Below are positions 41,838 through 61,117 of a stretch of DNA of 64,000 nt, one piece after another. The stretch covers positions 1 to 64,000 of IMG/VR virus record IMGVR_UViG_3300046170_000378. The stretch is one strand, 5' to 3'. Numbering within the stretch: the first letter of the stretch is position 1; each line of letters starts with the position of its first letter. A program made the translations under genes and the position numbers. Below the pieces are notes generated by a model. The model saw only the letters and a list, made by a program, of their open reading frames with translations. It did no database searches and was not told where the DNA came from.

Positions 41838-42833
41838 ATGATTATAAAAGATTTCCAAACATTTTTAAACGAAAGGTTTGCTGAACATGAGATTCCGCAA
41901 ATTCAAATCATTATGCGAGATATTGGCTTATCGCCAAAACAAGAGGATTTTACAAAAAGAATGTTGGCGGAAATATATGAAAAATATGCTCACTTAGTAC
42001 TAGTTGACGATGATGGGTATAATCAAGACGAGAGGATTCCAGACAATAGAAGACATAACAAAACTAAATATGATGAACCTATTTTAAACTTTATGTCGGT
42101 GTCTCATGTTGAACTTGAAAAAATGAAAGCTCGAGTCTATAACAAAGTAGAAGATATTCAAATAGCTGCAGATAAAATTAAATTCTACAAAGAATTTGAT
42201 CAAACAGATTTTGTTCCAAACTGTGCATACAAACTAGACGACATAGAAAAATTAGAACTTCCAATTATAGCTAAGCCAGCGATAGGTGAAAGTGCACAAG
42301 GAATCGAGAAGTTTGATACGTATGAAGATGCTAAGAGTTCTAAAATGAAATTCGATGTTTGGCAAGAGGCTAAAGAAATAGACAGAGAATTTAGAGCCTT
42401 TGTTATGAATAATAAAATTATCCACTTGTGCGAAAGAGTTACCAATACTAAAAACGACAAATCAGTTGGTAAAAAAGATGCTGATGAAAAAATAGATCTA
42501 GTGTACCTTGATCAAGACATGTCCAAGTTTCCACACATGGATGAAATAGAGAAAATTAAAGAGGAGCTTAGTAAAAAAGTAAAGCTAGAATTTTATAACA
42601 TTGATTTAATGTTAGATAAAGACGGGACGATGTGGGTACCAGAACTTAATGGAAATCCAGGAATTGGTCCAGGTAGTTTTACGGTAATTTACAAGCATTG
42701 GATAGAATGGGTTTATGATCAAGAATTGAGTGAAGAAGTAGATAAAGACCTTAAAGAAATGGCAAAAGCATACCGAGAAGGTATGAAAAAGGAGCATCCT
42801 GATGAATACGCGGGTAGTTTATCACCAATATAA
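41838..42833 (+). CDS. ATP-grasp (RimK-like) ligase with a capsid-targeting-like N-terminus
   Basis: LPIIAKPAIGESAQGI, EFRAFV, IDLM, ELNGNPG; starts MIIKDFQTFLNE. Confidence 0.75.
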   Translation: MIIKDFQTFLNERFAEHEIPQIQIIMRDIGLSPKQEDFTKRMLAEIYEKYAHLVLVDDDGYNQDERIPDNRRHNKTKYDEPILNFMSVSHVELEKMKARVYNKVEDIQIAADKIKFYKEFDQTDFVPNCAYKLDDIEKLELPIIAKPAIGESAQGIEKFDTYEDAKSSKMKFDVWQEAKEIDREFRAFVMNNKIIHLCERVTNTKNDKSVGKKDADEKIDLVYLDQDMSKFPHMDEIEKIKEELSKKVKLEFYNIDLMLDKDGTMWVPELNGNPGIGPGSFTVIYKHWIEWVYDQELSEEVDKDLKEMAKAYREGMKKEHPDEYAGSLSPI

Positions 42834-42868
42834 AAAAGTAAGATAATTCTTACTGCGATATATAATTT

Positions 42869-43798
42869 ATGAAAATTAAAGATTTCCAAACATTTATTAA
42901 TGAACGCGATAGTCAATTGCGCAAAGTAATCATGTGTGTTTCTACCGAACTAAGTGACTTTGAGTTTGTAATAGGTGATGATTTTCATGCTAGTCAATAT
43001 ATGGAATTATTTACAAAGGGAGATAATCCTAAAAAAGCCACATTACCTGTAATTAATTTTTGCAATACACACACTGAAAGATTATTAGAAGCGGGTACTC
43101 CAAAGGAATTAATTTATAATCCTAAAGAGAAAAAGATGGAAATAGCATCTAAAGTAAAATGGCATAAAACTCACAACAATTCTGAGCACGTGCCTAAAAC
43201 TATCTTAAACGTAGATGACATTGATCAACTTAAATTTCCTATTATAGCAAAACCTGAGAACAGATTTTCAGGCCAAGGTATAATTAAAATCGATTCACTC
43301 GAGGATGCTAAGGATATGGATCTTTCTGACTTTGAAGTTTTCAGCGAGAAGATAGACATCGATGAAGAACATAGAATAATGATGTGGAGAGGCGAGCCTG
43401 TTATGTGGGTACAAAGAGTACATGGTAACGAGGAGACCAAAAAGATGACTAAGAAAAAGGACGATAAGTTATACTTTAAATATGTACTTAAGAAAATGGA
43501 AGACATGCCACAGGATTGGCAAGCAGTCTTTGATGAATTTGCAGAAGCACATAATGAATTAGACATATATTCAGTTGACTTGATGGTAGATACAGACGGA
43601 AAACCGTGGGTAGTAGAAATGTCTTCTGAATTTATGCCGCTATATGGTGTAATGTCATATTACTATAAAAAAGTTTTTGAAGATTTTTATGGTAAAAAAC
43701 TAAATAAAGAAGAAGAGTCACAGATAGATATGCTTCAGCAAAAAGACGTTGAAGCTACTATTAATTTTGATCAAAAAAGATTTTCAGTAGAAAAATAA
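42869..43798 (+). CDS. ATP-grasp ligase paralog with a capsid-targeting-like N-terminus
   Basis: FPIIAKPENRFSGQGI, EHRIMM, VDLM...WVVEMS; starts MKIKDFQTFINE. Confidence 0.7.
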   Translation: MKIKDFQTFINERDSQLRKVIMCVSTELSDFEFVIGDDFHASQYMELFTKGDNPKKATLPVINFCNTHTERLLEAGTPKELIYNPKEKKMEIASKVKWHKTHNNSEHVPKTILNVDDIDQLKFPIIAKPENRFSGQGIIKIDSLEDAKDMDLSDFEVFSEKIDIDEEHRIMMWRGEPVMWVQRVHGNEETKKMTKKKDDKLYFKYVLKKMEDMPQDWQAVFDEFAEAHNELDIYSVDLMVDTDGKPWVVEMSSEFMPLYGVMSYYYKKVFEDFYGKKLNKEEESQIDMLQQKDVEATINFDQKRFSVEK

Positions 43799-43803
43799 AA
43801 AAC

Positions 43804-44037
43804 ATGGGACAAGCTAACATGGAATGTATGATCGTTAACGTATGGGTTCACCATATGCAAGTCGACGAGTTATTTGATTTTTTAAATGACAGGATAGATA
43901 CTGCTCCTGATTATTGGTTTAATTATGAGTCAACACCTGCGTCTATCACAGGTGGTCACGTAATGATAAGCCTTACATTTGAATCTTATTCTAAACTTTC
44001 AGCATACAAATCTTGGGACGATACCGTCTGGCAATAA
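43804..44037 (+). CDS. Hypothetical protein
   Basis: 77-aa ORF in line with its neighbours. Confidence 0.6.
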   Translation: MGQANMECMIVNVWVHHMQVDELFDFLNDRIDTAPDYWFNYESTPASITGGHVMISLTFESYSKLSAYKSWDDTVWQ

Positions 44038-44104
44038 ACTTTTTTATTCTTTAGTGTATAAGTAATACCTACATAGTTAGGAAGTTTACTTTAAAGGATA
44101 TATT

Positions 44105-44849
44105 ATGTACACATCACAGGAATTAAAGCAGATGATCTTTATTGATATAGAGACATCAACACAGAAAGAAACATTACAAGAAGTAATTGATGAAAATCCA
44201 ACTTTAGAAGAGTATTGGAACTTAAAAACTACTCAACTTCTAGAAAATCAACCAGAAACACTTAAAGATTTTAAAGATCCACATAAAATGTGGTCAAGAA
44301 TGGCAGGGCTTTATCCAGAATGGGGTAAAATAGTCTGTATTTCTATGGGCCAAATACAATTTGATGAGACTGGTCACCCAAATGATTTTAAAGCTGTCTC
44401 GTTTCATGGTGATGATGAAACTAATATTCTTAAAGAATTTATGACGACTGCAGCCAAGATCATGCAGAAGTACCCAAAGATGCAGTGGGTTGGGCATAAT
44501 ATTAAAGGATTCGATATGCCATATCTAATTAAAAGGTCATTGATCAATAGAGTTAGTGTACCTTCACCGTTTCATCTACATAAGCAAAAGCCATGGGAAA
44601 ACTGTTTATTGGACACACAAGACGTTTGGAAATTTGGAGGCTGGAACTCAGCTAAATTAGGTTTAATCTCAGAACTACTGGGTATTCCATCGCCCTAAGG
44701 ACGCAATGTCAGGTCCAGAAGTAAATGAGTATTATTGGAACGGTAGACTTGAAGAAATAAAAACTTATTGTGAAAAGGATATTCAAGCTACTGCTAACAT
44801 CATGTTGAAGTTGGCTAATATGCCAATTGTTGCAGAGGCACCGTTTTAA
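44105..44849 (+). CDS. Predicted DEDD 3'-5' exonuclease, PolB-exo-like (frameshift near 44695)
   Basis: FIDIET, VGHNIKGFDMPYL, DTQDVWKFG, EIKTYCEKDI. Confidence 0.8.
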
Positions 44850-44963
44850 ACCTGACAAACTGACATACGCTTAAGACAATAAGTCTTAAATACTACATTG
44901 GAATAATATTTTCAGTATACCTATCGAGCACGTTGCTCATATAAACAAATAAAAAACAAAATT

Positions 44964-45338
44964 ATGTATTTAACAAATTTATCAAACTTAGGTAACGGTG
45001 CATTGGAAGATGCATTCGACAATTTTTTTAACTTTCCAGTTGCGAGAGAAACATGGGACACATTAGGAATTACAGGACCTCAATATAAGACTGCAAAAGA
45101 CATGCTAATGGTTAGTCTTCCAGGATTTAGTAAAAAAGATATTAATCTAGAAATCAAAGGTCAAGTAATTACCATTAGTGCTGAAGACAAAGACAATTCT
45201 TTTGCTAAAGGCTTTACCAAAAAATTTAGATTTCCTGAAGAAATCGACATGGACTCTATTACGGCTAAAATGTCAGACGGTATCTTAACGCTTAACTTTA
45301 AGCCATCGAATGACACTAAGAAAATAAATATAAAATAA
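44964..45338 (+). CDS. Small heat-shock protein (Hsp20)
   Basis: LPGFSKKDINLE, FTKKFRFPEEID...ITAKMSDGILTL. Confidence 0.85.
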   Translation: MYLTNLSNLGNGALEDAFDNFFNFPVARETWDTLGITGPQYKTAKDMLMVSLPGFSKKDINLEIKGQVITISAEDKDNSFAKGFTKKFRFPEEIDMDSITAKMSDGILTLNFKPSNDTKKINIK

Positions 45339-45399
45339 TTTAGCCAGGATTTTTTTATGTCAATTATTTGTGGTATATTAGTACTATAATAATCAAAAT

Positions 45400-45711
45400 A
45401 TGGAAGAAGATAACTTTGACTTTGACGACTTTTTAGAAAATTCTAATAACGAGTTTAATCACAAGCTAGAAAAATATAAGGAAGCCATGATTTCGGCGGC
45501 GATCGATCAGAACTATCAAAACATCGTGAACCAAGGTATAAGCGATTGGCATCTTAGAATGATGGAGCCTACTGAATTAAACGAATTGATGCAAACGTTT
45601 AACGTGATGATCAAACATTATGAAGACCTAGAAGAGTTTGAAAAATGTGCAGAGTTGGCAAAACATAGAAAAATCATAGATCAAAGCATGTCGCTAAGGC
45701 AAGATATATAA
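45400..45711 (+). CDS. Small protein with a C-terminal UVR-like motif
   Basis: HYEDLEEFEKCAELAK. Confidence 0.7.
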   Translation: MEEDNFDFDDFLENSNNEFNHKLEKYKEAMISAAIDQNYQNIVNQGISDWHLRMMEPTELNELMQTFNVMIKHYEDLEEFEKCAELAKHRKIIDQSMSLRQDI

Positions 45712-45755
45712 TCTATAACGTGTTAGTGCTATCTAACTAACGCGGGCCCCCGATT

Positions 45756-45785
45756 AAACCCAGTCAGAAACGACTGGGTTTTTTA
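45756..45785 (+). terminator. Intrinsic terminator
   Basis: AAACCCAGTC-AGAAAC-GACTGGGTTT followed by a T run. Confidence 0.8.
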
Positions 45786-45798
45786 TGATATATAATGT

Positions 45799-46143
45799 AT
45801 GAAACACCTTAAATCTCTAAAAGAATTTTTAAATGAAGAGTATGTTATGCAGCATTTGGAAAAAGAGTATAATATTATTCTTGATATATGGGACAATGGA
45901 GAGTATTTAGAACTGGGTAAAATAGAAGTTCCTAAAAATCTTAGATCTTTAGGCGTCGGCACCAAAGTCATGAAAAGAATTGTGAAAATGGCAGACGAAC
46001 AAAACAAAGATATTAGGCTTACGCCTTCTAAAGATTTTGGTGCTACCTCGGTATCTAGACTTGAAAAATTCTATAGAACTTTTGGTTTTGTAAAGAATAA
46101 AGATTTAAAATATAAGGACACTATGGTCCGATATAGTAAGTAA
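45799..46143 (+). CDS. GNAT acetyltransferase with a capsid-targeting-like N-terminus
   Basis: IEVPKNLRSLGVGTKVM (acetyl-CoA motif), LEKFYRTFGF; starts MKHLKSLKEFLNE. Confidence 0.75.
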   Translation: MKHLKSLKEFLNEEYVMQHLEKEYNIILDIWDNGEYLELGKIEVPKNLRSLGVGTKVMKRIVKMADEQNKDIRLTPSKDFGATSVSRLEKFYRTFGFVKNKDLKYKDTMVRYSK

Positions 46144-46147
46144 CAAT

Positions 46148-46675
46148 ATGAAATATCTAAAATTATTTGAACAATTTCTTTTAGAAAAAGAACCAGAGTG
46201 GCAAGACGCCGATTGGCCTGATGCTGAAGGTAGATTTAGAGATTTATCTATTAAGGATTTAGCAGCATGGCTAATTAAAACCAGAAAGAAAGATCTAAAA
46301 GCAATTAGTGGATCATTGACGCAACAGATAGTCTTTAACAGAAATGAAGATCCTGAATATGCTGAAAAAATGGAAAAGACTAGACAGGAAGTTTATAAAC
46401 AATTAGATAGACAAGATCTTATGGAAGATTTTGAAACAGATAATCCAGAACTGGACAGAATTAGAAAATTTGCAGGATCTATACAAGATTTACACACATG
46501 GATGAGAAGAGCGATGCAAGATCAGGGTCGTGATGGTGAAACAAATCCGTATAAAGACACTATAATGGTAAATGGTCCACAAACTGGCGAATTAGATCAG
46601 TCTTTACCATATCAAGATTTTCAAAATGGTAAATCAGACCTAGTAAAGAATAGACATGGAAGAAAAGACAGCTAA
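46148..46675 (+). CDS. Hypothetical protein with a capsid-targeting-like N-terminus
   Basis: Starts MKYLKLFEQFLLE. Confidence 0.7.
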   Translation: MKYLKLFEQFLLEKEPEWQDADWPDAEGRFRDLSIKDLAAWLIKTRKKDLKAISGSLTQQIVFNRNEDPEYAEKMEKTRQEVYKQLDRQDLMEDFETDNPELDRIRKFAGSIQDLHTWMRRAMQDQGRDGETNPYKDTIMVNGPQTGELDQSLPYQDFQNGKSDLVKNRHGRKDS

Positions 46676-46838
46676 AGAAATTGCAATTCAACTAAAAAGA
46701 ATTGCCGATGCTCTTGAATCTAAGAGTAAACTAGAGATGCAAAGAGAAAAACGTAAAATCAAGTTAGAAAAACTTGAAGAACGTAAATTAAGATCTGACC
46801 TTCGTATTAACGAAAATTCTAGAAATGAATCATTATGA
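46656..46838 (+). CDS. Small coiled-coil hypothetical protein
   Basis: IAIQLKRIADALE; overlaps both neighbours. Confidence 0.55.
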   Translation: MEEKTAKEIAIQLKRIADALESKSKLEMQREKRKIKLEKLEERKLRSDLRINENSRNESL

Positions 46839-47634
46839 TACATTAGGTGTAGACAGAACTGCAACACAAGAAGAAATTAAGAAGGCTTATAGAAAGCTAG
46901 CCAAAGAATATCATCCAGACAGATCTGGCGGTGATGATTCAAAATTCAAAAAAGTTGCTGAAGCATATGATGTTATCGGTGATGAATCCAAAAGAAGCAT
47001 GTACGACATGCAAGGCTCAGGTGATAATTTCTTTGGGCAATTTCAAGATTCAAATGTAAATTTAAGCGACATCTTTGATCAGATGTTTGGCGGTGCACAA
47101 CAACCACAGCAGCGCGGTCTAGATCTTAGAATGGAAATGCACGTTAGTTTTATGGAAGCCATGAATGGCTTAGATAAACAATTTACTATTAACGGTACTT
47201 TAGTTAATGTGAGTTTTAAACCTGGTTTAAAAACTGGCCAGAAATTTAGATTACACGGTAAGGGTCAACCCCATCCGTACAATTCTAATCTTCCAAACGG
47301 AGATCTAGTAATTCATACACACGTTGAAGTAAATCCTAATTTTATTTTACAAGGCGATGATATTTGGATAGAACATAATCTGCCATGGTACGATATTATG
47401 AGTGGCTGTAAAATCGAAGTATGGTCTCCTGATGGACTGCTAGCAATAAATGTACCTAAAGGCACAAAACCTGGAAAAACACTACGAATAAAAGATAAAG
47501 GCTACCCAATATATGGCAAAAATAGACGAGGTGCTCTTTTATGTAGAATAAACGCAGTGTACCCAGAATTAAATGAAGAATCTCTTGAATATATAAATAA
47601 AATAAAACAAGTACAGGAGAGTAATAATGAATAA
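46825..47634 (+). CDS. dnaJ: DnaJ/CbpA-type co-chaperone (no Zn finger)
   Basis: J-domain YDTLGV...IKKAYRKLAKEYHPDR; C-terminal domain with LRIKDKGYP. Confidence 0.9.
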   Translation: MNHYDTLGVDRTATQEEIKKAYRKLAKEYHPDRSGGDDSKFKKVAEAYDVIGDESKRSMYDMQGSGDNFFGQFQDSNVNLSDIFDQMFGGAQQPQQRGLDLRMEMHVSFMEAMNGLDKQFTINGTLVNVSFKPGLKTGQKFRLHGKGQPHPYNSNLPNGDLVIHTHVEVNPNFILQGDDIWIEHNLPWYDIMSGCKIEVWSPDGLLAINVPKGTKPGKTLRIKDKGYPIYGKNRRGALLCRINAVYPELNEESLEYINKIKQVQESNNE

Positions 47635-47908
47635 TTCATTTTTTGATAAGAATAGAAACGAAGAAGGCGACATGTGGTATAACATTGTCAATAATATTAT
47701 GTTATTGAATTCTGAGGCTTTCTTTAGAGCTGTATTTGATGCAATGCAAAATCATCCAACTTATGTAATATTATCTGATTTTGAAAGTGATAGAAAGATT
47801 TATATAATGGATCAAATGTTAGAACATTATGAAAAAAAGGAAGACTTTGAAAAGTGTAAAGTTATTTTTGAAATTAAAAAGCAAATAGAAATAGAAAATA
47901 GATGCTAA
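47627..47908 (+). CDS. Small protein with a C-terminal UVR-like motif
   Basis: HYEKKEDFEKCKVIFE. Confidence 0.7.
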   Translation: MNNSFFDKNRNEEGDMWYNIVNNIMLLNSEAFFRAVFDAMQNHPTYVILSDFESDRKIYIMDQMLEHYEKKEDFEKCKVIFEIKKQIEIENRC

Positions 47909-48090
47909 AAATAGAAGTTAATAAAGGGGGAATAGAAAGAGCCCTAAAAAACTATAAATCCAAGGTAATTAGAACTAAGCAATTAAAAAAACTTAGAGAT
48001 AGAAAACAATTTACCAAGCCTAGCGAAACAAGACGCAAGCAAATAGCTAAGGCTAAATACGTCCAATCTAAGAAGGATTCAAACGAATAA
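47902..48090 (+). CDS. rpsU: 30S ribosomal protein bS21
   Basis: IERALKNYKSKV.RTKQLKKLRDRKQFTKPSETRR...KAKY. Confidence 0.85.
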   Translation: MLKIEVNKGGIERALKNYKSKVIRTKQLKKLRDRKQFTKPSETRRKQIAKAKYVQSKKDSNE

Positions 48091-48193
48091 AGTAATATCC
48101 TAATATTTTAGGTATCAAATTATTCTTCATTACCATTTCACACAAAATATATACCTAGAGTGTTAGTCATACGACACACTTAATAAAAAACAA

Positions 48194-53204: not shown

Positions 53205-53208
53205 AATT

Positions 53209-53805: not shown

Positions 53806-53827
53806 CGACACTTAACATATAAGAAAT

Positions 53828-54049: not shown

Positions 54050-54965
54050 TTATGGATATTGTTGTATTAATACAACCCTACAGAAATCAGATAAAATTAC
54101 AACAAACCGCAGCATGATCAAGCGAACATTTGCGGCTAAAGGTATTGAGTACGCTTCAGAGTTGGCACTGCTTAACGCTAAAGACTTAGTTAAAATTATC
54201 AATTGGAATAATCGTAATGGCATCAAGCTGTTCCGTATCAGTTCTGACATGTTTCCATGGATGAGCGAGTACAATCTTAGTGATTTACCAGATTATACTA
54301 AGATTGCCAATACCCTTAAAGGTGCCGGCAAAATTGCAATGGATAATGGTCAACGCTTGACGTTTCATCCTGGCCCGTTTGATGTTTTGGCATCGCTCAC
54401 TCAGCGAGTAGTTGATAAATGTATTATTGATCTCAACAAACACGGTGAAATTATGGATTTGTTAGGTCTACCTAGAGATCATTCTGCACCTATTAATATT
54501 CACGTTAACACCACACAAGGTGGCAAGGAAGCTGCAATGCAACGATTCGTAGACAACTTTCATCTACTAGATGCATCTGTGCGCAAACGTCTTGTTGTAG
54601 AAAATGACGATAAAGAAAGTCAATACACTACAGAGGACCTATATGTAGGTGTATACAATAAAATTGGTGTGCCTATTACATTTGACTATCACCACCATTG
54701 GTGTCATCCTGGTGAATTATCTCAAGAAGAAGCCCTTAAATTAGCATCTACGACATGGCCTAAAGGTATTCGTCAACTTGTACATTTTTCTTCCTGCCAA
54801 CAGATACACGAAGACAGTACACAAACCAATAAGCGTGCACACGCAGATTATATTTATGAGCACATAGACGATTACGGTTTAGATTTAGACATTGAGTTAG
54901 AAGCTAAAGCTAAGGAATTAGCGCTACAACAATATGTGAAACAATTTAAACACCAATTAGTATAA
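54036..54965 (+). CDS. uvsE: UV-damage endonuclease
   Basis: YGYCCIN, LFRISSD, RLTFHPG, RLVVENDD, ITFDYHHH, HADYI, ELEAKAKELA. Confidence 0.9.
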   Translation: MTNSNYGYCCINTTLQKSDKITTNRSMIKRTFAAKGIEYASELALLNAKDLVKIINWNNRNGIKLFRISSDMFPWMSEYNLSDLPDYTKIANTLKGAGKIAMDNGQRLTFHPGPFDVLASLTQRVVDKCIIDLNKHGEIMDLLGLPRDHSAPINIHVNTTQGGKEAAMQRFVDNFHLLDASVRKRLVVENDDKESQYTTEDLYVGVYNKIGVPITFDYHHHWCHPGELSQEEALKLASTTWPKGIRQLVHFSSCQQIHEDSTQTNKRAHADYIYEHIDDYGLDLDIELEAKAKELALQQYVKQFKHQLV

Positions 54966-54983
54966 ACATTATAAAAAACGATT

Positions 54984-55184
54984 ATGAAGTATTTAAACAA
55001 TTTTTTTGGCGCATTTGGAAGATTCTTAAATTATTTACTAGATAACCAAATGGGTGTACAGTCAAATATATTTTGGCTTATAGCAATTCTTAAAATTAAC
55101 ACAAATAGTTTTTGGACTTTTGCTATACCCGCAATTCTATTTAGAGGATTGCAAATAATAATTGATGAATTAAAAAAGAAATAA
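54984..55184 (+). CDS. Small hydrophobic protein
   Basis: 66-aa ORF. Confidence 0.5.
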   Translation: MKYLNNFFGAFGRFLNYLLDNQMGVQSNIFWLIAILKINTNSFWTFAIPAILFRGLQIIIDELKKK

Positions 55185-55188
55185 ACTT

Positions 55189-55434
55189 ATGAATTTAAAA
55201 GTAGAAGCTTTAAGATTAAAGTATGAAGCTCAAAAACTAGAGGCCCTTGCAACACTAGAGGTTTACATGAAAAACTCAGCAGGTATTGGTGAACATCCAC
55301 AAGTAATTGAAGAAATGGACAATTTAGTAAAATCTGTGGCTGAAGCTACGGATTGTTTAGAAACACTAAATGAAATATTTACTAGCTCTGATGAGGGTAC
55401 AGCATTGACAGATTCAGGCTCCGTTAACAGTTGA
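55189..55434 (+). CDS. Small conserved-type phage protein
   Basis: LEVYMKNSAGIGEHPQVIEEMD. Confidence 0.7.
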   Translation: MNLKVEALRLKYEAQKLEALATLEVYMKNSAGIGEHPQVIEEMDNLVKSVAEATDCLETLNEIFTSSDEGTALTDSGSVNS

Positions 55435-55463
55435 ATTATTTAGGCATAATATACTAACGAGCC

Positions 55464-55494
55464 AGGGGGAAGATAGCATCTTCCCCCTTTTTTT
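55464..55494 (+). terminator. Intrinsic terminator
   Basis: AGGGGGAAGAT-AGC-ATCTTCCCCCT followed by a T run. Confidence 0.85.
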
Positions 55495-55506
55495 GATATA
55501 TAAAGT

Positions 55507-56205
55507 ATGAAACACATTAAGGCATACGAAAGTTTTGTGAATGAAGGTAGATCTAAGTATGATGGTCTTGCCTCAAAACTGACTAAATTAACGTTTAGGA
55601 AATGGGTAAACACATATAAAGGTGGCAAAGCAGTTATCAATTATATGGACCAAATCGAAGAACGAGGTTTAGAATTTGACTTTGATGCAACTATTCATAT
55701 CGATAAGAAATATAAAGGCTTTGAAGTTTTACCTTCAACTGGTGCAGATGGTAGAGATGAAGACGATGATGGTGATTATCAAACTCCATATATTCTAATA
55801 GATTTTGGTATAAATCCTGATTGGATTCCAGGAGAATGGTCTACTGTATATTTTCATTTAGCAGATGTTATTAGACATGAAATGGAACACATAACACAGG
55901 ATGGCGTAGACACTGGTAATTATAGAGCTGGCAAACCTATTGAAGATGATAGCGAAATAAGAAATCTAATTAAATTAGGTCTTCTACCATACTTTCATTA
56001 TTTAATGTTACCTAAAGAAGTAGATGCTAATTTACAGGGACTTAGATATGAGGCTAAAAAAAGAAAAGAGCCAATGAGTGATGCAGTTAACAGATACTTA
56101 GACACTCAAATAGAAGGTGACGTAATTAGTAAACAAGAAAAAGAAGAAGTGTTAGATCTTTGGAGAAAACGCGCTGCAAAAATAGGTGGTATACCGAAAT
56201 TTTAA
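55507..56205 (+). CDS. HExxH zincin-motif protein with a capsid-targeting-like N-terminus
   Basis: VIRHEMEHITQ and downstream EVDA; starts MKHIKAYESFVNE. Confidence 0.65.
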   Translation: MKHIKAYESFVNEGRSKYDGLASKLTKLTFRKWVNTYKGGKAVINYMDQIEERGLEFDFDATIHIDKKYKGFEVLPSTGADGRDEDDDGDYQTPYILIDFGINPDWIPGEWSTVYFHLADVIRHEMEHITQDGVDTGNYRAGKPIEDDSEIRNLIKLGLLPYFHYLMLPKEVDANLQGLRYEAKKRKEPMSDAVNRYLDTQIEGDVISKQEKEEVLDLWRKRAAKIGGIPKF

Positions 56206-56206
56206 T

Positions 56207-59200
56207 ATGAAATACATTAATGAAAAGGCGCCTAGCGTAAAAAGCAAAATTAAGGACATCAATAAAAAGATTGGTAAACTGGTTTCTAAAAAAGAGGATG
56301 CTATTAGTAAAGCCAAAGAAATGGCAGATTCTGAAGAACCTTCTGGAAAAATGCAAGCTTCATTGGCAAAGATACAACTTAGACAATCTGAAAGCGAAGC
56401 TGAAAAATTAATGTTGCAAAAGCAGGCTGAAATACTTAAAGCTAAAATAGACACTGCTAAGAAAAAAGAAAAAACAACCAAAGACATAGATATAGAAGAA
56501 ATGGAAAATAGATCAATTACAATATTAGAAGGTGTTATGTCTGATATACACCAGATGATTAACAACCATAAAAACTTTGATTCTTTTCAAAAAGAATTCT
56601 TCAAAGAGTACGGACATAAAAAGGTAATGAAGAAAACACCAGAATTTTTGGAATGGCTAGAAGCTCTTTATAACGACAGTCAATTTGCAGTCGCTGAAGC
56701 AGATGCAAAACCAGGACCAGATCCATACATGAGAGGTTTAGATGACGATGATGAAGAGAAAAAAGAAGATAAAATGAAAAAGCAAGCTGAAATGGACGAT
56801 GACGATCCAGATGCTTATAAAGAATTACCAGGTGACAAAGAGGCCAAAGCTAAAGGTGAAGTAAAAACTTCTAAACATGTAAAAAAATATCACGAATTAT
56901 ATGGTGATAAAAAAGATGAATCAGTAGTTACTGAAGCTAAAGGTTTACCAAGCCATGCTAGAAATTTATCTATAAAACTAAAAACGCACTGGTTACCTGA
57001 CACAGACAACAAGGATATTTATTTCTTAGCTGATACAAACAAAGGTCAAACAATAACCATTGATTTATCTGTAAGAACTGGAGAATATAAAGTTATTGAT
57101 AAAAAAGATAATGTTATTTATCAGGGCGGAGACCCTTATGCTGCCGCTAAGTTAATTGAATCAGTAGAAATATCTGAAAAGGCTAAGCCTTATGCTTTTG
57201 TACTCAATGATTGGTTTAACGCAGTAGAAAAGGCTGGTAATTTTGAAAATATTGGAAAAGAATTAAAAGCAGCTGGATACGAATTTGAATTTGAAGATAA
57301 TAAAAACAATCCAGCATATAAAGTTGAACATGATGAAGCTACTTTTGCAATTGCTAATAAGAAATATTGGGGAAGACAATGGCGGGCCATTGAGAAACAA
57401 ATAGGTGATATCGCAATAGGTTGGGTTTTTCCAAATGATACGTATAATGAATCTAATATTAATGAAGAAAAGGCAGAAGGCGATAGAGGTAAAATAGCCG
57501 ATGCTAAAATAGAAACTGCTCTTAAAACTAAGGCTGAAGAAACTGGAGTACCAATTGGTTTAATTAGAATCATAATGAGAAGAGGTATGGCCGCGTGGAA
57601 AACTGGTCACAGGCCAGGTGCAAGTGAACAACAATGGGGATATGCACGAGTAAATGCATTTTTAACTAAAGGTGAAGGTACATGGGGTGGAGCAGACAAA
57701 GATGTCGCTAAAGAAGTTAGAGATGGCGGTCATGACAAAGGACTTAAAGAGAGAATAGAATCAGATATTAGATTGAGTGATAAAGTAGTTGCCTTTAAAA
57801 CTGATGATTCTAGTTTCAACGGACAATCTCCTAATACAATTACATGTAATAACTGTACATGGACTTGGATGAAACAAGACGGTGGAGATGATATGTACGT
57901 GTGTCATAAATGTGGAACAAATAATGCACCTCTATTGGGTGAATCTACATTAAACGAAGAAGATACTTACAACGACTATCCTGCTGCCGCAAAGAAAAAT
58001 GCTAAGAAAGCTCTTGATTGGAGAGACGAGCATGGAAGAGATGAAGTTGATGCGGGAACAGCAGTTGGCTGGACTCGTGCAAATCAATTAGCAAAGGGTG
58101 AAAAGATCTCAGCTGACACTGTAAAAAGAATGGCATCGTTCAATAGACACAGAAAGAATTCTTCAATAAAGGCTGAATTAAAAGGAACTCCATGGAAAGA
58201 CAAAGGTTATGTTTCTTGGTTAATTTGGGGCGGAGATGAAGGCGTCGATTGGGCTATGAAAAAATCAAAAGAAATAGACGATATGAAAAAAGAGTCAAAA
58301 CAAATGAAGTACGTTAAACCACTTAATGAAGCTGAGAAGTATATCACTGATGAATTTAAAGTAGGTGATAAAATTAAAACTAATTTTGGTGAATGGGAAG
58401 TAATTGAAACTGACTATGCACCTAATAAAAGTTTTATAGCACCTTTTGTATTTAAAGGAAAAGATATGGAAAGAGTAAACATACCTAATCCTCCTAAGAC
58501 TAATAAGAAAGCTGTAGGCTATAAAGTTACTGATGGTGGCAAATACCCTATTATTGGTTTCTTGTATCAATATAAAGATATTACTAAACTTGCAACAGTT
58601 GGCGTTGATGAATCAGTGGTTAACGAAAAAGATAAACACACATCAACTGATTTTTCTAAACCAGGAAATAATGGTGACATTTACTTTTCAAAAAGAGAAG
58701 GTGATGCTGTTGGTATTAGATTAGAAGATAAATTACAAATGATTTATGTTTTTCAAGAAGAACCTAAATTAGGAAGGATTCAAAAAACAGATAAACGTTG
58801 GGAAAACATGGGTCCAGCTTCTGAAGAACTTTTAATTGATTTAAGAGGTAGAACAAATGGTAAAATATTATTTGACTTTGTTTCAACTCTTGAAGAATCA
58901 GTAGTTACTGAAGCATTCATCGATCATGATAAAATGAAGTACGTTAAACCACTATATGAAGCTAAAATCAAAGTCACTAAAGATAAATGGCCTTACTTAG
59001 AGTTTAAAGTAGGTAGCAAGAAACACAAAGTAGAGTTTGATTATGAAGATATTATTGATGATCATGGAAATGAGGGTCAAGATCAATATTGGATAGGTAA
59101 AGATGATGAAGGTCAGGAATGGATGATTGATGTTTATGCAAACTATATGGGCGATGTTGAAGAGGTTCACTATGATACTATTGTAAAAGAATCTGTTTCG

Positions 59201-60199
59201 TCTGAATTTTCTCCAATGGGATATGCTAAGCGCGTGGTTTCAGGAGCAATTAAAATAAAAGATGCAATGAAAGAAGCTGGAATTTCTCTAGCTAACATGG
59301 CCAAATTAATTAAGAGAATCGATAAATCTTTTGATGTCGATGCAGCATTTTTAGAAAAGAATGTTATGCAAGATGATCCTGAAAAATTCGTTGAATCTAG
59401 TAAGCGTAAGCTTAAGTATATTAGAGTACTTAATGAAGACTACTCTCAAAGAGCAAGAAATTTTAGAGTTAATCTTAGAACAAGACTTGAAGCTATGAAG
59501 AAAGGAGAAAAGATTAGTTATGGTAAACTTGCTTGGACGGCATTAGGTAATGGTAATTTCAAAGACAGTAAAGGTAGAACAGTACCTTATCAAGATATAG
59601 TACAAGATTTGAAACATGCAGTAAAACCTGATATATTGAGACATCGTGGTGCAAGCGGTGCTGATATGGTAGATGCTTATTTAGCATTTGAAAGTAAAGT
59701 AAATGAAGGTTACTGGTCTAGTTATGAATATGACAAGTGGACTAAAGAGAATGGCAAACCTAAATATCCAAAATGGGTAAGGACTACTTTAAAAGAAATC
59801 GTTAAAGGTGGTTTTATGGAGCCAGTCTATGATGCTGAACACAACTACATGGTTTTATGGTTAGCTTCATTAGAGAACAAGAATAGAGCTGAATTATATG
59901 CATATGATAAGAAGGGTGAAAAAGCTCTCGGTAAAGTAGGTTATGCAATGTATCAAAGATTCTATAACGACTTAACTGGATACAATATGTTCTTTATGCA
60001 AGGGGCGATGTATGCCTTAGAAGTATCTAAGAATATTAAAGATAGAGTGGCTAATGGCGAACCAGTTGAACCTGCATATTATATGATGAAAGAATTCTTT
60101 AACAACATGGGCATGGACACTAAGAGAAGTAGAGTTTTTAATGCAGCTTATGAAAAGTTAGAAAAATGGATGAAAGAAAACAGCATTCCAACTTTATAA
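56207..60199 (+). CDS. Large multi-module protein (about 1330 aa), putative head-internal polyprotein
   Basis: Starts MKYINE; recurring ES-x-[VIL]-[NT]-E and KYV/I..L.E linkers; Zn-ribbon CNNC..CHKC; RRGMAAWKTGHRPG..QQWGYARVN module; YP...KNA...GWTRANQLA...WLIWGG module. Confidence 0.75.
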   Translation: MKYINEKAPSVKSKIKDINKKIGKLVSKKEDAISKAKEMADSEEPSGKMQASLAKIQLRQSESEAEKLMLQKQAEILKAKIDTAKKKEKTTKDIDIEEMENRSITILEGVMSDIHQMINNHKNFDSFQKEFFKEYGHKKVMKKTPEFLEWLEALYNDSQFAVAEADAKPGPDPYMRGLDDDDEEKKEDKMKKQAEMDDDDPDAYKELPGDKEAKAKGEVKTSKHVKKYHELYGDKKDESVVTEAKGLPSHARNLSIKLKTHWLPDTDNKDIYFLADTNKGQTITIDLSVRTGEYKVIDKKDNVIYQGGDPYAAAKLIESVEISEKAKPYAFVLNDWFNAVEKAGNFENIGKELKAAGYEFEFEDNKNNPAYKVEHDEATFAIANKKYWGRQWRAIEKQIGDIAIGWVFPNDTYNESNINEEKAEGDRGKIADAKIETALKTKAEETGVPIGLIRIIMRRGMAAWKTGHRPGASEQQWGYARVNAFLTKGEGTWGGADKDVAKEVRDGGHDKGLKERIESDIRLSDKVVAFKTDDSSFNGQSPNTITCNNCTWTWMKQDGGDDMYVCHKCGTNNAPLLGESTLNEEDTYNDYPAAAKKNAKKALDWRDEHGRDEVDAGTAVGWTRANQLAKGEKISADTVKRMASFNRHRKNSSIKAELKGTPWKDKGYVSWLIWGGDEGVDWAMKKSKEIDDMKKESKQMKYVKPLNEAEKYITDEFKVGDKIKTNFGEWEVIETDYAPNKSFIAPFVFKGKDMERVNIPNPPKTNKKAVGYKVTDGGKYPIIGFLYQYKDITKLATVGVDESVVNEKDKHTSTDFSKPGNNGDIYFSKREGDAVGIRLEDKLQMIYVFQEEPKLGRIQKTDKRWENMGPASEELLIDLRGRTNGKILFDFVSTLEESVVTEAFIDHDKMKYVKPLYEAKIKVTKDKWPYLEFKVGSKKHKVEFDYEDIIDDHGNEGQDQYWIGKDDEGQEWMIDVYANYMGDVEEVHYDTIVKESVSSEFSPMGYAKRVVSGAIKIKDAMKEAGISLANMAKLIKRIDKSFDVDAAFLEKNVMQDDPEKFVESSKRKLKYIRVLNEDYSQRARNFRVNLRTRLEAMKKGEKISYGKLAWTALGNGNFKDSKGRTVPYQDIVQDLKHAVKPDILRHRGASGADMVDAYLAFESKVNEGYWSSYEYDKWTKENGKPKYPKWVRTTLKEIVKGGFMEPVYDAEHNYMVLWLASLENKNRAELYAYDKKGEKALGKVGYAMYQRFYNDLTGYNMFFMQGAMYALEVSKNIKDRVANGEPVEPAYYMMKEFFNNMGMDTKRSRVFNAAYEKLEKWMKENSIPTL

Positions 60200-60242
60200 A
60201 CTAAATTTGATATATAATAAAAGAAAACAATAATACAATATT

Positions 60243-60803
60243 ATGGCAAAACAAATATTATCGTTCGAAGAGTACAGCAAGAATCTTAAAGCTTCTGATG
60301 TAGGAGAACACGAAAACCCTGAAGGGTATCCAGCACCAGAAGGTGAAACTGATGACGTCGAAGATTTTAATGACGAAGAGGTTGAAGAAGACGAGGAAAG
60401 AGAAGAAGAAGTTGCAGACGCAGAAGATGTTGAAGAAGCTGAACTAGAGGCAGATCCTGAACAAAGATCTGAAGACGAAAACGATGCTGAAGTTTTAGTT
60501 GTTTCAGAAATGGTTGCTAAGGTTTATAAGAACGTAGTTATGGAAGCATGTAATTATGCAGGAGATGATTACGATGACCACACTTTAGAAACATATATGA
60601 AAGAAAATGCTGCACTAGTTGCAGGTATGGCAGCACAAGCACTCGAAGAAGCTTACAAAGAAATCAACGAAGCTGATGAAATGGCTAACGAAACTTACGA
60701 AGCTATGATGAATGAGATGAAAGAGGCTTATTGTAATAAAATTGATCAATGTAGAGAATCTTTTACTGGTGCACCAAGAGGTTACGCTGAAGACGAAGCA
60801 TAA
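60243..60803 (+). CDS. Highly acidic protein, possible head-internal or scaffold-like
   Basis: D/E-rich; MAKQILSFEEY start; class III promoter at 60209. Confidence 0.65.
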   Translation: MAKQILSFEEYSKNLKASDVGEHENPEGYPAPEGETDDVEDFNDEEVEEDEEREEEVADAEDVEEAELEADPEQRSEDENDAEVLVVSEMVAKVYKNVVMEACNYAGDDYDDHTLETYMKENAALVAGMAAQALEEAYKEINEADEMANETYEAMMNEMKEAYCNKIDQCRESFTGAPRGYAEDEA

Positions 60804-60820
60804 AAATAACGAGAAGAATC

Positions 60821-61117
60821 ATGAAATACTTGAAATTATTTGAACAGTTTGTTAACGAAAAATTTAATTCTAAGAGAGCAGCGAAAGAGCTAATAGCAAT
60901 GGGATTTAAAAACGTTGATGGCAATGGCGGTGAAATCTCAGTTGAAACTGCAGAAATGGAAAATCCATTCGGTCATGATGCGGCGTTTACGTTCTTTTGG
61001 AACGGTAAAGACGTATGGGCAGAAGCTGAAGATGGTTCTTATGTAGAACAAACCCAAGAAATCGAAACTGTAGAGCAGTTTGCAGACTGTCTTGAATTTG
61101 GAGAGGGCTGGTCATAA
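60821..61117 (+). CDS. Hypothetical protein with a capsid-targeting-like N-terminus
   Basis: Starts MKYLKLFEQFVNE. Confidence 0.7.
   Translation: MKYLKLFEQFVNEKFNSKRAAKELIAMGFKNVDGNGGEISVETAEMENPFGHDAAFTFFWNGKDVWAEAEDGSYVEQTQEIETVEQFADCLEFGEGWS

What the first reader, a model, noticed from the sequence alone, without database searches (positions are those of the whole stretch)
41838..61117. A shared capsid-targeting-like N-terminal tag on unrelated enzymes suggests virion-packaged effectors
Seen: unrelated proteins share an N-terminal K..(F/Y)..F(L/I/V)NE tag. These are 41838 MIIKDFQTFLNE, 42869 MKIKDFQTFINE, 45799 MKHLKSLKEFLNE, 46148 MKYLKLFEQFLLE, 55507 MKHIKAYESFVNE, 60821 MKYLKLFEQFVNE and 56207 MKYINE, with a weaker match at 60243. 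Four of them have GATATATA exactly 4 nt before the ATG. Established: T4 internal proteins carry a capsid-targeting sequence (MKTYQEFIAE) that the gp21 protease removes after [ILV]-X-E. Inference: two ATP-grasp ligases, a GNAT and a zincin are packaged, processed and injected.
Basis: partly seen in the sequence, partly recalled or inferred. Interest (0 to 1): 0.72.

Follow-up and report, generated by a model that had tools for sequence, protein, structure and literature searches.

The report
Capsid-targeting-like tags on phage enzymes
An uncultured marine jumbo phage puts a short N-terminal tag, matching phage T4's capsid-targeting and cleavage signal, on many unrelated enzymes, so it probably loads them into its head, though no experiment has shown this.

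Summary
All eight N-termini and the four GATATATA-N4-ATG arrangements are in the sequence. The tag is far commoner at N-termini than chance allows: 9 observed against 1.3 expected, or 4 against 0.05 for the strict form.

The window is the first 64 kb of a 212-kb uncultured marine jumbo phage. It has a T4-type head module: portal, gp21-type Peptidase_S77 protease fused to a scaffold, and Gp23-type capsid protein.

The tag consensus is M-K-[YH]-[IL]-K-x-[FY]-E-x-F-[LIV]-N-E. Its conserved positions P7, P4, P3 and P1 coincide with the four residues of T4's MKTYQEFIAE that were mapped as needed for targeting (4, 7) and for processing (8, 10). The same regular expression recovers T4's internal proteins as a positive control.

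- 48 of 59 ATP-grasp orthologues keep the tag.
- About 25-40 unrelated proteins of a related 462-kb phage carry it.
- Tagged genes share the GATATATA(A) element of the head genes (13 of 16 against 28 of 280).
- The same ...[LIV]-N-E junction separates shuffled modules inside the 1330-aa protein at 56207.

Packaging, cleavage and injection remain inferences. The GNAT and zincin labels are only tentative. Verdict: a new, expanded variant of the T4 capsid-targeting system; confidence about 0.6.

The parts
41826..41833 (+). GATATATA promoter-like element, 4 nt before the ATG of 41838
   Evidence: The same element lies 20-35 nt upstream of the portal, protease and tail-sheath genes, and 93 nt upstream of the capsid gene.
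41838..41873 (+). N-terminal tag MIIKDFQTFLNE of ATP-grasp ligase 1
   Evidence: 48 of 59 orthologues keep aromatic-x-x-aromatic-[LIVMF]-x-E near the N-terminus. In the AF2 model helix 6-15 is detached, and residues 11-17 have pLDDT below 50.
41838..42833 (+). ATP-grasp ligase, RimK/LysX-like fold (331 aa)
   Evidence: Pfam Dala_Dala_lig_C scores 27 bits against a cut-off of 24. AF2 pLDDT is 92. Foldseek PDB matches ArgX, RimK and LysX at E 1e-11 to 1e-10.
42857..42864 (+). GATATATA promoter-like element, 4 nt before the ATG of 42869, preceded by a hairpin
42869..43798 (+). ATP-grasp ligase 2 (309 aa), paralogue of 41838, with tag MKIKDFQTFINE (42869-42904)
   Evidence: Pfam TTL scores 20.9 bits against a cut-off of 20.1; R2K_3 scores 24 bits. 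29% identity to 41838 in alignment A2.
45759..45784 (+). Terminator-like hairpin CCCAGTC...GACTGGG followed by T6, directly upstream of the promoter-like element
   Evidence: Read from the sequence.
45787..45794 (+). GATATATA promoter-like element, 4 nt before the ATG of 45799
45799..46143 (+). Mini-GNAT-like protein (114 aa) with tag MKHLKSLKEFLNE (45799-45837)
   Evidence: GNAT Pfam families hit at E 3e-4 to 2e-3, all below their cut-offs. The best PDB sequence hits are N-acetyltransferases at E 0.017-0.08. An RSLGVG acetyl-CoA-motif-like stretch is visible in the sequence. phrog_10691 matches at E 6e-14; there the module sits inside a 3925-position profile.
46148..46675 (+). Protein of unknown function (175 aa) with tag MKYLKLFEQFLLE (46148-46186)
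   Evidence: No Pfam or PHROG hit. The ESM Atlas gives only viral hypothetical clusters.
55465..55494 (+). Terminator-like hairpin GGGGGAAGA...TCTTCCCCC followed by T7
   Evidence: Read from the sequence.
55495..55502 (+). GATATATA promoter-like element, 4 nt before the ATG of 55507
55507..56205 (+). HExxH-motif protein (232 aa), a putative zincin-like metalloenzyme, with tag MKHIKAYESFVNE (55507-55545)
   Evidence: R123, H124, E125, E127, H128, R152, Y165 and E171 are invariant in 44 homologues. AF2 pLDDT is 93, with residues 1-12 a separate low-confidence helix. No significant PDB fold match; the weak matches are mostly zincins. Most copies in the 44-sequence alignment, N-terminal or internal, are preceded by [LIVM]-x-E and then G-R-Y-D.
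56207..60199 (+). 1330-aa mosaic protein with short tag MKYINE and six internal [LIV]NE junctions. P1 Glu at residues 420, 584, 708, 807, 1077 and 1167, that is codons at 57464, 57956, 58328, 58625, 59435 and 59705.
   Evidence: DUF5824 at residues 442-498. E[SQ].[LIV]NE occurs 10 times in the proteome against 0.4 in shuffles, 4 of them in this protein. BLAST HSP boundaries against 119 homologues cluster at all six junctions. The junction motif is kept whatever lies upstream. The module after Glu584 occurs at the N-terminus of two homologues behind the tags MKFIESVLNE and MLYIKESVLNE.
60209..60216 (+). GATATATA(A) promoter-like element, 26 nt upstream of 60243
60243..60803 (+). Very acidic 186-aa protein with a weak tag-like N-terminus MAKQILSFEEYSK and no [LIV]xE after it
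   Evidence: No family hit.
60821..61117 (+). 98-aa protein of unknown function with tag MKYLKLFEQFVNE (60821-60859). It has no promoter-like element of its own and lies directly downstream of 60243.

Best explanation
The tags are capsid-targeting and processing propeptides of the T4 type, used on an expanded scale.

The phage is an uncultured marine jumbo phage. It has a T4-like head and a translation-start signature typical of Bacteroidota. It makes a set of unrelated proteins from the same promoter-like element as its head genes.

Each carries a 10-13-residue amphipathic N-terminal helix, M-K-[YH]-[IL]-K-x-[FY]-E-x-F-[LIV]-N-E. The proposed steps are:
1. The aromatic residues at P7 and P4 dock the protein onto the scaffolding core, so that it is enclosed when the capsid shell assembles.
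2. The gp21-type serine protease, fused to the scaffold (G000 147160-149622), cuts after the Glu of [LIV]-x-E and frees the mature protein inside the head.
3. The same junction motif between modules of the large mosaic proteins lets the protease cut them into separate modules.
4. The freed proteins leave with the DNA at infection and act on host targets.

**Read from the sequence or computed:** the motif and its enrichment, its match to the T4 signal, the T4-type protease and capsid protein, the shared promoter-like element, the conservation, and the junctions at module boundaries.

**Inferred:** docking, cleavage, presence in virions, injection, and the activity of the cargo.
For: 1. **T4-type head module.** Portal phrog_213. 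An 820-aa protein with Peptidase_S77 at residues 26-138. Capsid protein matching Pfam Gp23 at E 1e-44.
2. **Match to the T4 signal.** T4 IPII and IPIII start MKTYQEFIAE then A. Residues 4 and 7 matter for targeting, 8 and 10 for processing (PMC9026906). These are P7, P4, P3 and P1, the conserved tag positions here. Lys at P9 is also shared. Short orthologue tags such as MKNYRYFLNE are 10 residues long, like T4's.
3. **Enrichment and controls.** 9 N-termini against 1.3 expected. T4 is a positive control and PTm1 a negative one.
4. **Co-regulation.** [AG]ATATATA occurs 56 times on the + strand and 3 times on the - strand, mostly between genes. It precedes the portal, protease, capsid and sheath genes. 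It lies within 60 nt upstream of 13 of 16 tagged genes against 28 of 280 others, Fisher p = 4e-10. For the set defined by regular expression alone the figures are 7 of 9 against 34 of 287, p = 2e-5.
5. **Tags in the head module.** Two tagged genes sit there: 146729, between portal and protease, and 151308, after the capsid gene.
6. **Conservation on unrelated proteins.** 48 of 59 ATP-grasp orthologues at 42-97% identity keep the tag, with variable length. The 462-kb phage LR756500, whose capsid protein is 50% identical, has 25 matching N-termini against 3.4 expected. They are of the type MKYIKEYEEFLNE and include LRR proteins and a DUF2201 metallopeptidase.
7. **Candidate sites in known protease substrates.** The capsid protein starts MANLINE then SEI; LR756500 has MIKLINE then AEI. 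T4 gp23 has SFLTE before AEI, ending at residue 65 of the record. The protease has RVNE then S just after its S77 domain.
8. **Internal junctions.** E[SQ].[LIV]NE occurs 10 times against 0.4 in shuffles. All six internal sites of the 56207 protein coincide with module boundaries. The motif is kept whether a module is internal or N-terminal. The HExxH domain shows the same.
9. **Structure.** The tag is a detached, low-confidence helix in two unrelated AF2 models. In the ATP-grasp model the residues just around the predicted cut have the lowest confidence.
Against: - There is no experimental datum. The phage is uncultured, with no virion proteome and no N-terminal data.
- The protease-tag complex prediction gave no answer.
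- Some tag-like N-termini lack a Glu at P1: 151308, 198242 and 60243 here, and about a third of those in LR756500, which have FVND, FILD or FKSE. Cleavage therefore cannot be universal. In T4, Asp at position 10 blocks processing but not targeting (PMC9026906).
- P1' is often Arg, Lys or Glu, not the Ala seen in T4.
- PTm1 has the same head type and no tags.
- That the GATATATA element is a late promoter rests on the genes it precedes, not on RNA data. The metatranscriptome contigs were uninformative.
- Most cargo functions are weakly assigned or unknown.
Confidence: 0.6

Rival explanations
1. The motif is a cleavage signal only. [LIV]-N-E junctions and N-terminal propeptides are cut by the prohead protease or another phage protease to mature or activate polyprotein-like enzymes in the infected cell. 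The proteins are not loaded into the capsid and not injected.
For: The motif occurs at internal module junctions as well as at N-termini. The cargo consists of enzymes, not the small basic proteins typical of T4 internal proteins.
Against: In T4-like phages gp21-type proteases are active only inside the assembled prohead (established knowledge; PMC5694885). The best-conserved tag positions include the aromatic P7 and P4 residues, which in T4 serve targeting rather than cleavage (PMC9026906). Many LR756500 tags keep MKYIKEYEEF but lose the P1 Glu.
Confidence: 0.12
2. The tag has nothing to do with the capsid. It could be an N-terminal amphipathic helix used for membrane association, oligomerisation or recognition by a chaperone or degradation machinery. 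Or it could be a coding-sequence feature that favours translation of leaderless or Shine-Dalgarno-less mRNAs.
For: Most genes with the promoter-like element only 4-7 nt from the ATG carry tag-like N-termini. Only 3.6% of genes have a Shine-Dalgarno-like motif. ATG AAA starts are A-rich.
Against: Tags also occur on genes with 25-40 nt leaders and on genes inside operons. Conservation is at the amino-acid level, with synonymous changes. The key positions lie at codons 7-13, far from the start codon. The same motif recurs hundreds of residues inside proteins, at module junctions. The match to the T4 signal and the T4 positive control would then be coincidence.
Confidence: 0.12
3. The tags are hitch-hiking remnants of a mobile terminator-promoter-start cassette. 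Such a cassette would be comparable to the promoter-stem-loop cassettes of T4-type phages, which shuffle genes in variable regions. The encoded peptide would have no function of its own.
For: A hairpin, then GATATATA, then 4 nt and the ATG recur at 42869, 45799 and 55507. Tagged genes are scattered among non-structural genes.
Against: Tags diverge at synonymous sites and in length while keeping P9, P7, P4, P3 and P1 across orthologues of 42-97% identity. Tags exist without the cassette, and the promoter-like element exists without tags. Internal junction copies have no promoter.
Confidence: 0.06

Closest known systems
Capsid-targeting sequence (CTS) of phage T4 internal proteins IPI, IPII and IPIII (MKTYQEFIAE, removed by gp21)
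   Same: Both are N-terminal peptides of 10-13 residues. Lys at P9, an aromatic residue at P7 and P4, [LIV] at P3 and Glu at P1 are shared. Both phages have a gp21-type S77 protease and a Gp23-type capsid protein. In both, the genes lie scattered among non-structural genes. The same regular expression finds both sets.
   Different: - P2 is nearly always Asn here and Ala in T4.
- The tag is usually 3 residues longer (MK-Y-I-K...).
- At least 9-16 carriers here and about 25-40 in LR756500, against 3-4 in T4.
- The cargo is enzymes and effector-like modules (ATP-grasp, GNAT-like, HExxH, LRR, metallopeptidase), not small basic proteins.
- The motif also separates modules within mosaic proteins.
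- The host and phage lineage are far from the T-even phages.
T4 Alt, a packaged ADP-ribosyltransferase processed by gp21
   Same: An enzyme loaded into the head, trimmed by the prohead protease, and injected to modify host proteins (PMC5694885, PMC9026906). This is the functional model for the tagged enzymes here.
   Different: No sequence relation. The enzyme classes differ. Packaging of the proteins studied here is not shown.
Propeptide-bearing ejection and inner-body proteins of phiKZ, 201phi2-1 and SPN3US, cut by S80 proteases
   Same: These are jumbo phages whose many head-internal proteins carry propeptides. Large proteins are cut at several sites, always after Glu (PMC5694885).
   Different: Their motif is A/S/G-x-E, with a small residue at P3; here P3 is Leu, Ile or Val, as in T4. 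Pfam places this protease with S77 (42 bits) rather than S80 (24.5 bits). No stereotyped N-terminal tag has been described for those phages.
Promoter-stem-loop gene cassettes in variable regions of T4-type phages (recalled from memory: Arbiol, Comeau, Krisch and colleagues 2010; not checked here)
   Same: A stem-loop plus a promoter directly flanks small, variable, non-essential genes.
   Different: Here the promoter-like element is the one used by the structural genes. The shared part extends into the coding sequence as a conserved peptide.

Membership tests
T4-type capsid-targeting sequence / internal head proteins | Short N-terminal peptide with the residues needed for targeting (T4 positions 4 and 7: aromatic at P7 and P4) | tested here: met
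   P7 is F/Y in 8 of 9 tags of this genome (Leu in the other) and P4 is F/Y in 9 of 9. The same holds in the 27 LR756500 tags and the 48 orthologue tags, but those sets were selected with a pattern that fixes these positions. T4 sequences were read from NC_000866. Residue roles are from PMC9026906.
T4-type capsid-targeting sequence / internal head proteins | Processing site [LIV]-x-E at the end of the tag (T4 positions 8 and 10) | tested here: met
   Present in 41838, 42869, 45799, 46148, 55507, 56207 and 60821. Absent in 60243. P2 is Asn in most, and this position was not imposed by the search pattern.
T4-type capsid-targeting sequence / internal head proteins | The phage encodes a gp21-type (Peptidase_S77) prohead protease, a scaffolding core and a Gp23-type capsid protein | tested here: met
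   PF03420 at E 9.5e-11, 42 bits against a cut-off of 27. PF07068 at E 1e-44. phrog_207 and phrog_138. The stretches GELDHP, ISSRAAG and YDLVADPG are visible in the protease; I take them to be the catalytic His, Ser and Asp motifs from memory of related proteases, and I made no alignment to T4 gp21.
T4-type capsid-targeting sequence / internal head proteins | Expressed together with the head genes | tested here: inconclusive
   Tagged genes and head genes share the [AG]ATATATA upstream element: 13 of 16 against 28 of 280, p = 4e-10. No usable RNA data.
T4-type capsid-targeting sequence / internal head proteins | The protein is present in virions with the tag removed, and enters the host with the DNA | not testable with these tools
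   Uncultured phage. No proteome available.
T4-type capsid-targeting sequence / internal head proteins | The cargo is a small basic DNA-associated protein (classical IPs) | tested here: not met
   The cargo is 98-1330 aa and includes an ATP-grasp fold, a GNAT-like protein, an HExxH protein and an acidic protein. In this respect it is closer to T4 Alt.
phiKZ/SPN3US-type propeptides (S80 protease) | Cleavage motif with a small residue at P3 (A/S/G-x-E) | tested here: not met
   P3 is L/I/V in all tags and in nearly all junctions, where Met also occurs. The motif is described in PMC5694885.
ATP-grasp ligases (RimK/LysX/ArgX-like) | ATP-grasp fold with its conserved nucleotide-binding residues | tested here: met
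   For 41838: Foldseek PDB matches at probability 1.00 to 3vpb, 4iwx and 5k2m. Lys, Glu, Arg and Asp columns are invariant in A2. Pfam score is above the cut-off. 42869 is included only as a 29%-identical paralogue.
GNAT acetyltransferases | Full GNAT fold with the acetyl-CoA-binding motif A | tested here: inconclusive
   45799 has only 114 aa. All Pfam GNAT hits fall below their cut-offs. PDB sequence hits are at E 0.017 or worse. An RSLGVG motif-A-like stretch is present. No structure was predicted.
Zincin metallopeptidases | HExxH helix plus a third zinc ligand within a zincin fold | tested here: inconclusive
   HExxH and a downstream Glu171 are invariant. Foldseek PDB finds nothing below E 0.1. 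VIA-align gives Z of 5.1 or less, with many weak zincin matches. AFDB gives weak ImmA/IrrE, M48 and M3 matches.

The most novel reading that the evidence does not exclude
A lineage of uncultured marine huge phages has turned the T4 capsid-targeting and cleavage signal into a general address code. Dozens of unrelated enzymes and protein-binding modules carry it. Some are single genes. Others are strung together as freely shuffled modules in polyprotein-like giants, separated by prohead-protease sites. All are loaded into the head, cut apart there and delivered with the DNA. The capsid would then be a modular, fast-evolving effector delivery device, much richer than in any characterised T4-like phage.
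Probability: 0.4. Interest if true: 0.8.

Novelty: new variant of a known kind. Interest (0 to 1): 0.66.

Why it matters
If these tags do load proteins into the head, three things follow.
- A simple sequence rule would predict the injected protein arsenal of a whole clade of uncultured jumbo phages directly from metagenomes.
- The first minutes of their infections would involve protein ligases, acetyltransferase-like and metalloenzyme-like modules, and LRR proteins acting on the host.
- The mosaic proteins with protease-site junctions would be a new way for phages to shuffle and co-deliver effector modules.

It also gives a second, very divergent natural version of the T4 targeting tag, which has been used to pack foreign proteins into capsids. 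Comparing the two shows which positions are essential: P9, P7, P4, P3 and P1.

The main limit is that everything beyond the sequence pattern is still inference.

Tried and rejected
- **Complex prediction.** Protease domain (residues 1-190) with the first 40 residues of the 55507 protein. No answer, score 0.00, controls not run. This is not evidence either way.
- **Metatranscriptomes.** Contigs from four seawater metatranscriptome runs were laid on 41500-47000. Only short, low-depth pieces matched, so there is no information on transcript starts, and DNA carry-over cannot be excluded.
- **Strict DNA pattern in LR756500.** A pattern for F-x-x-F-[LIVMF]-N-E gave 2 hits, no more than the control. 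This was misleading: that phage mostly has Tyr at P7 and varies at P2. The protein-level scan found 25 tags.
- **GATATATAA in PTm1.** Not enriched. PTm1 has no tags either.
- **Literature.** Searches for the tag strings, and for capsid targeting in huge or marine phages, found no prior description in the library. The PTm1 paper with possible virion proteomics is not in the library, and its GenBank annotation carries no proteomic labels.
- **Fold of the HExxH protein.** Foldseek against the PDB gave no significant match.
- **Function of 46148.** The ESM Atlas gave only viral hypothetical clusters.
- **Compositional artefact considered and rejected.** AT-rich N-termini alone do not explain the tags: PTm1 is a negative control and internal positions show no such enrichment.
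- **Recent DNA duplication considered and rejected.** Synonymous differences between tags argue against it.

Full report
**What the window is.** The window is the first 64 kb of a 212,342-bp IMG/VR virus record, estimated 76% complete. The same sequence is held by many seawater metagenome runs.
- The genes are almost all on the + strand (258 of 296 called ORFs).
- Only 3.6% of genes have a Shine-Dalgarno-like motif, and the regions upstream of starts are A-rich.
- The capsid protein (G000 149727-151187) matches Pfam Gp23 at E 1e-44. It is 50% identical to that of the uncultured 462-kb phage LR756500.1, about 40% to the Prevotella Lak phages, and 35% to Tenacibaculum phage PTm1.
- Together these point to a marine jumbo phage of a Bacteroidota-type host. 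The host is an inference.

**The head module.**
- A T4-like portal (phrog_213) at G000 145106.
- A 122-aa acidic ORF at 146729.
- An 820-aa protease-scaffold fusion at 147160, with Peptidase_S77 (the T4 gp21 family) at residues 26-138, 42 bits against a cut-off of 27.
- The capsid protein.
- A 326-aa Lys/Glu/Ala-rich ORF at 151308.

**Checking the observation.** GATATATA lies exactly 4 nt before the ATG at 41838, 42869, 45799 and 55507.

I called 296 ORFs in the whole record and asked how often [FYL]..[FY][LIVA].E begins within the first 11 residues.
- It does so in 9 proteins. The rate at internal positions predicts 1.3.
- The strict form [FY]..F[LIV]NE gives 4 against 0.05.
- More tagged or tag-like genes lie outside the window, at G000 105634, 106688, 112324, 114092, 117258, 146729, 151308 and 198242.
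- The tags differ at synonymous codon positions, so what is conserved is the peptide, not a recently copied piece of DNA.

Two controls used the same script.
- In phage T4 the pattern picks out IPII and IPIII, the proteins on which the capsid-targeting sequence was defined, plus the 54-aa gp61.1. The looser core pattern adds IPI.
- In the AT-rich jumbo phage PTm1 there is no enrichment, 3 against 1.2.

**What the tag looks like, and its match to T4.** I aligned the tags on their final Glu, taken as P1.
- The consensus is M-K-[YH]-[IL]-K-x-[FY]-E-[EQ]-F-[LIV]-N-E.
- Positions P13, P12, P10, P9 and P2 were not imposed by the search pattern and are conserved all the same.
- T4 IPII and IPIII begin MKTYQEFIAE followed by Ala (read from NC_000866).
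- The review PMC9026906 reports from amber-suppression experiments that T4 residues 4 and 7 matter most for targeting and residues 8 and 10 for processing. Those are P7, P4, P3 and P1: an aromatic residue, Phe, Ile and Glu. They are the conserved positions here, and Lys at P9 is shared as well.
- Some orthologue tags are exactly ten residues long, for example MKNYRYFLNE.
- The T4 gp23 site reads SFLTE before AEI and ends at residue 65 of the T4 record. gp24 begins MAKINELLRE then S. That these are the maturation sites is established knowledge.
- The capsid protein here begins MANLINE then SEI, and that of LR756500 MIKLINE then AEI.
- The protease has LIVE at residues 8-11 and RVNE then S just after its catalytic domain.

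**Co-regulation with the head genes.** [AG]ATATATA occurs 56 times on the + strand and 3 times on the - strand, mostly between genes.
- It lies 20-35 nt upstream of the ATG of the portal, protease, tail sheath and many other structural genes, and 93 nt upstream of the capsid gene.
- By its position and by its likeness to the T4 late promoter TATAAATA (established knowledge), I read it as the promoter of the structural genes. No RNA data confirm this.
- It lies within 60 nt upstream of 13 of 16 tagged or tag-like genes against 28 of 280 others (odds ratio 39, p = 4e-10). For the nine genes defined by the regular expression alone the figures are 7 of 9 against 34 of 287, p = 2e-5.
- The two remaining window genes, 56207 and 60821, directly follow tagged genes that have the element.
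- In nine genes the element sits only 4 nt from the ATG, which would give leaderless or nearly leaderless mRNAs. Several of these are preceded by a terminator-like hairpin.
- Tags also occur on genes with 25-40 nt leaders, so the tag is not simply a feature of leaderless genes.

**Conservation.** The ATP-grasp protein 41838 has 59 relatives at 42-97% identity in marine metagenomes, on contigs of up to about 250 kb.
- 48 of them keep aromatic-x-x-aromatic-[LIVMF]-x-E near the N-terminus.
- The distance from the tag to the conserved core (PQLQIIMRG...) varies.

In LR756500, 25 N-termini match the pattern against 3.4 expected. About 40 begin MKYIKEYEEF or something close to it.
- The carriers include three LRR proteins and a DUF2201 metallopeptidase-VWA protein.
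- About a third of them lack Glu at P1 (FVND, FILD, FKSE). This fits T4, where Asp at position 10 blocks processing but not targeting (PMC9026906). It means that cleavage need not accompany every tag.

Another marine phage contig carries a different flavour, MENFDLKKYLAEGKLLNE then S on three proteins and MNQLTKFLVDGILNE then D on a 1329-aa protein.

**The motif also marks internal junctions.**
- [LIV]NE is the most over-represented [LIV]xE tripeptide in the proteome, 113 against 58 expected.
- The extended form E[SQ].[LIV]NE occurs 10 times against 0.4 in within-protein shuffles. Two are the N-terminal tags of 55507 and 60821, four lie inside the 1330-aa protein at 56207, and two inside G000 112324.
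- The 56207 protein is a mosaic. BLAST against 119 homologues gives alignment boundaries that pile up at all six of its internal [LIV]NE sites, with P1 at residues 420, 584, 708, 807, 1077 and 1167.
- For each module the sequence upstream differs between homologues but ends in [LIV]-[NST]-E. The module EKAEGDRG... is preceded by VFESTVNE, KDESVVNE, KFTVNE, SESNINE or KESLITE.
- The internal junctions look like tags without the Met: KYIKPLNE inside proteins, and MKFIKPLNE at the N-terminus of homologues.
- The module that follows Glu584 here (LGESTLNE then EDTY...) occurs in two homologues at the very N-terminus, behind MKFIESVLNE or MLYIKESVLNE.
- The HExxH domain of 55507 behaves the same way. 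Most copies in a 44-sequence alignment, stand-alone or embedded in proteins of 450-1580 aa, are preceded by [LIVM]-x-E and then G-R-Y-D.
- A motif kept at the N-terminal border of a module wherever that module sits is what one expects of a processing site that creates the mature N-terminus.

**The cargo.**
- **41838** is an ATP-grasp enzyme. The AF2 model has pLDDT 92, and Foldseek matches ArgX, LysX and RimK at E about 1e-11. Those enzymes ligate amino acids to protein C-termini.
- **42869** is a 29%-identical paralogue of 41838.
- **45799** is a 114-aa protein with sub-threshold GNAT hits and a motif-A-like RSLGVG stretch. Its best PHROG match is a segment of a 3925-position profile, so in other phages this module too sits inside giant proteins.
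- **55507** has an invariant RHExEH motif and a downstream invariant Glu. Its confident model (pLDDT 93) has no significant PDB counterpart, and the weak matches are mostly zincins. The zincin label is therefore tentative.
- **46148, 60243 and 60821** have no recognisable family.
- In both AF2 models the tag is a separate helix of low confidence. In the ATP-grasp model the residues just around the predicted cut (11-17) have pLDDT below 50.
- The tagged genes lie among non-structural genes: a glycosyltransferase, HAD phosphatases, an exonuclease, Hsp20, DnaJ, PhoH, RNase HII, UvdE, dCMP deaminase and a helicase. T4's ip genes are similarly scattered among non-structural genes.

**Interpretation.** The best explanation is a T4-type capsid-targeting and processing system on an expanded scale. 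The tag would dock the protein to the scaffolding core. The gp21-type protease would cut after the Glu, both at N-terminal tags and at module junctions. The freed proteins would leave with the DNA.
- Read from the sequence or computed: the motif, its statistics, its match to T4, the head machinery, the shared upstream element, the conservation, and the junction pattern.
- Inferred: docking, cleavage, presence in virions, injection and enzymatic targets.
- Confidence: about 0.6. The rivals are cleavage without packaging, a helix with an unrelated role or a translation feature, and a functionless cassette remnant. Each explains part of the data, but none explains the match to T4 together with the junction pattern.

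**Novelty.** The T4 capsid-targeting sequence, and tag-like sequences in close T-even relatives, are known (PMC9026906). Multi-site processing of head proteins is known in phiKZ-like phages, with a different motif (PMC5694885). A survey of jumbo phages lists ATP-grasp, GNAT and zincin enzymes as likely host-modifying proteins; the passages I read do not mention a targeting tag (PMC7824862). I found no description of such tags in huge or marine phages. This is therefore a new variant of a known kind. It stands out for the number and diversity of carriers and for the polyprotein-like mosaic proteins.

Noticed in passing
window 17300-18400, 27500-31100, 32360-34900, 37190-38200: Long arrays of 9-, 18- and 27-nt repeats encode Gly-X-Y collagen-like stretches. 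They lie inside very large ORFs (26814-31802, 1662 aa; 31829-35059, 1076 aa; 37101-38351) and in a region at 17.1-18.9 kb where the ORF caller splits the frame. They are probably fibre proteins.
   Followed up: no
whole record; in the window e.g. 16090, 21928, 26778, 38416, 60209: GATATATA(A) looks like the promoter of the structural genes, with 56 copies on the + strand and 3 on the - strand. In nine genes it lies only 4 nt from the ATG, implying leaderless or nearly leaderless mRNAs. It is often preceded directly by a terminator-like hairpin.
   Followed up: partly
whole record: Only 3.6% of genes have a Shine-Dalgarno-like motif within 20 nt upstream, and the upstream regions are about 50% A. 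This is the translation-start signature of Bacteroidota and their phages.
   Followed up: partly
window 1-6800: The first 7 kb differ from the rest. They hold small ORFs on the minus strand, have higher G+C (0.40-0.44 against about 0.33) and show no positive GC skew. This may be a separate module or the end region of the genome.
   Followed up: no
window 44964-45338 and 46825-47634: The phage encodes its own Hsp20 small heat-shock protein and a full DnaJ (J domain plus C-terminal domain). They sit among the tagged genes.
   Followed up: no
window 55507-60199: The gene pair 55507/56207 has its stop and start 1 nt apart. In relatives the HExxH domain of 55507 is an internal or C-terminal domain of proteins of 450-1580 aa, often together with cytidylyltransferase-like domains, and the modules occur in many different orders. 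This points to gene fission and fusion at the tag junctions.
   Followed up: partly
L051 / T4 NC_000866 18966-19130 (minus strand): T4 gp61.1, an unannotated 54-aa protein next to the primase gene, begins MKTFKEFIKE then D. That is a close copy of the internal-protein targeting sequence.
   Followed up: no
G000 183000-185400 and 185439-186578 (outside the window): Short ORFs that look like tRNA genes read in the wrong frame suggest a tRNA cluster. It lies next to a CCA-adding enzyme (Pfam PolyA_pol head domain), whose gene is also preceded by the GATATATA element. No tRNA scan was run there; the window itself has no tRNA genes.
   Followed up: no
L052 (ENA contig, 27.8 kb): A different AT-rich marine phage contig carries another tag flavour, MENFDLKKYLAEGKLL[NK]E, on three small proteins, and MNQLTKFLVDGILNE on a 1329-aa mosaic protein. 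The use of such tags may be wider than one clade.
   Followed up: partly
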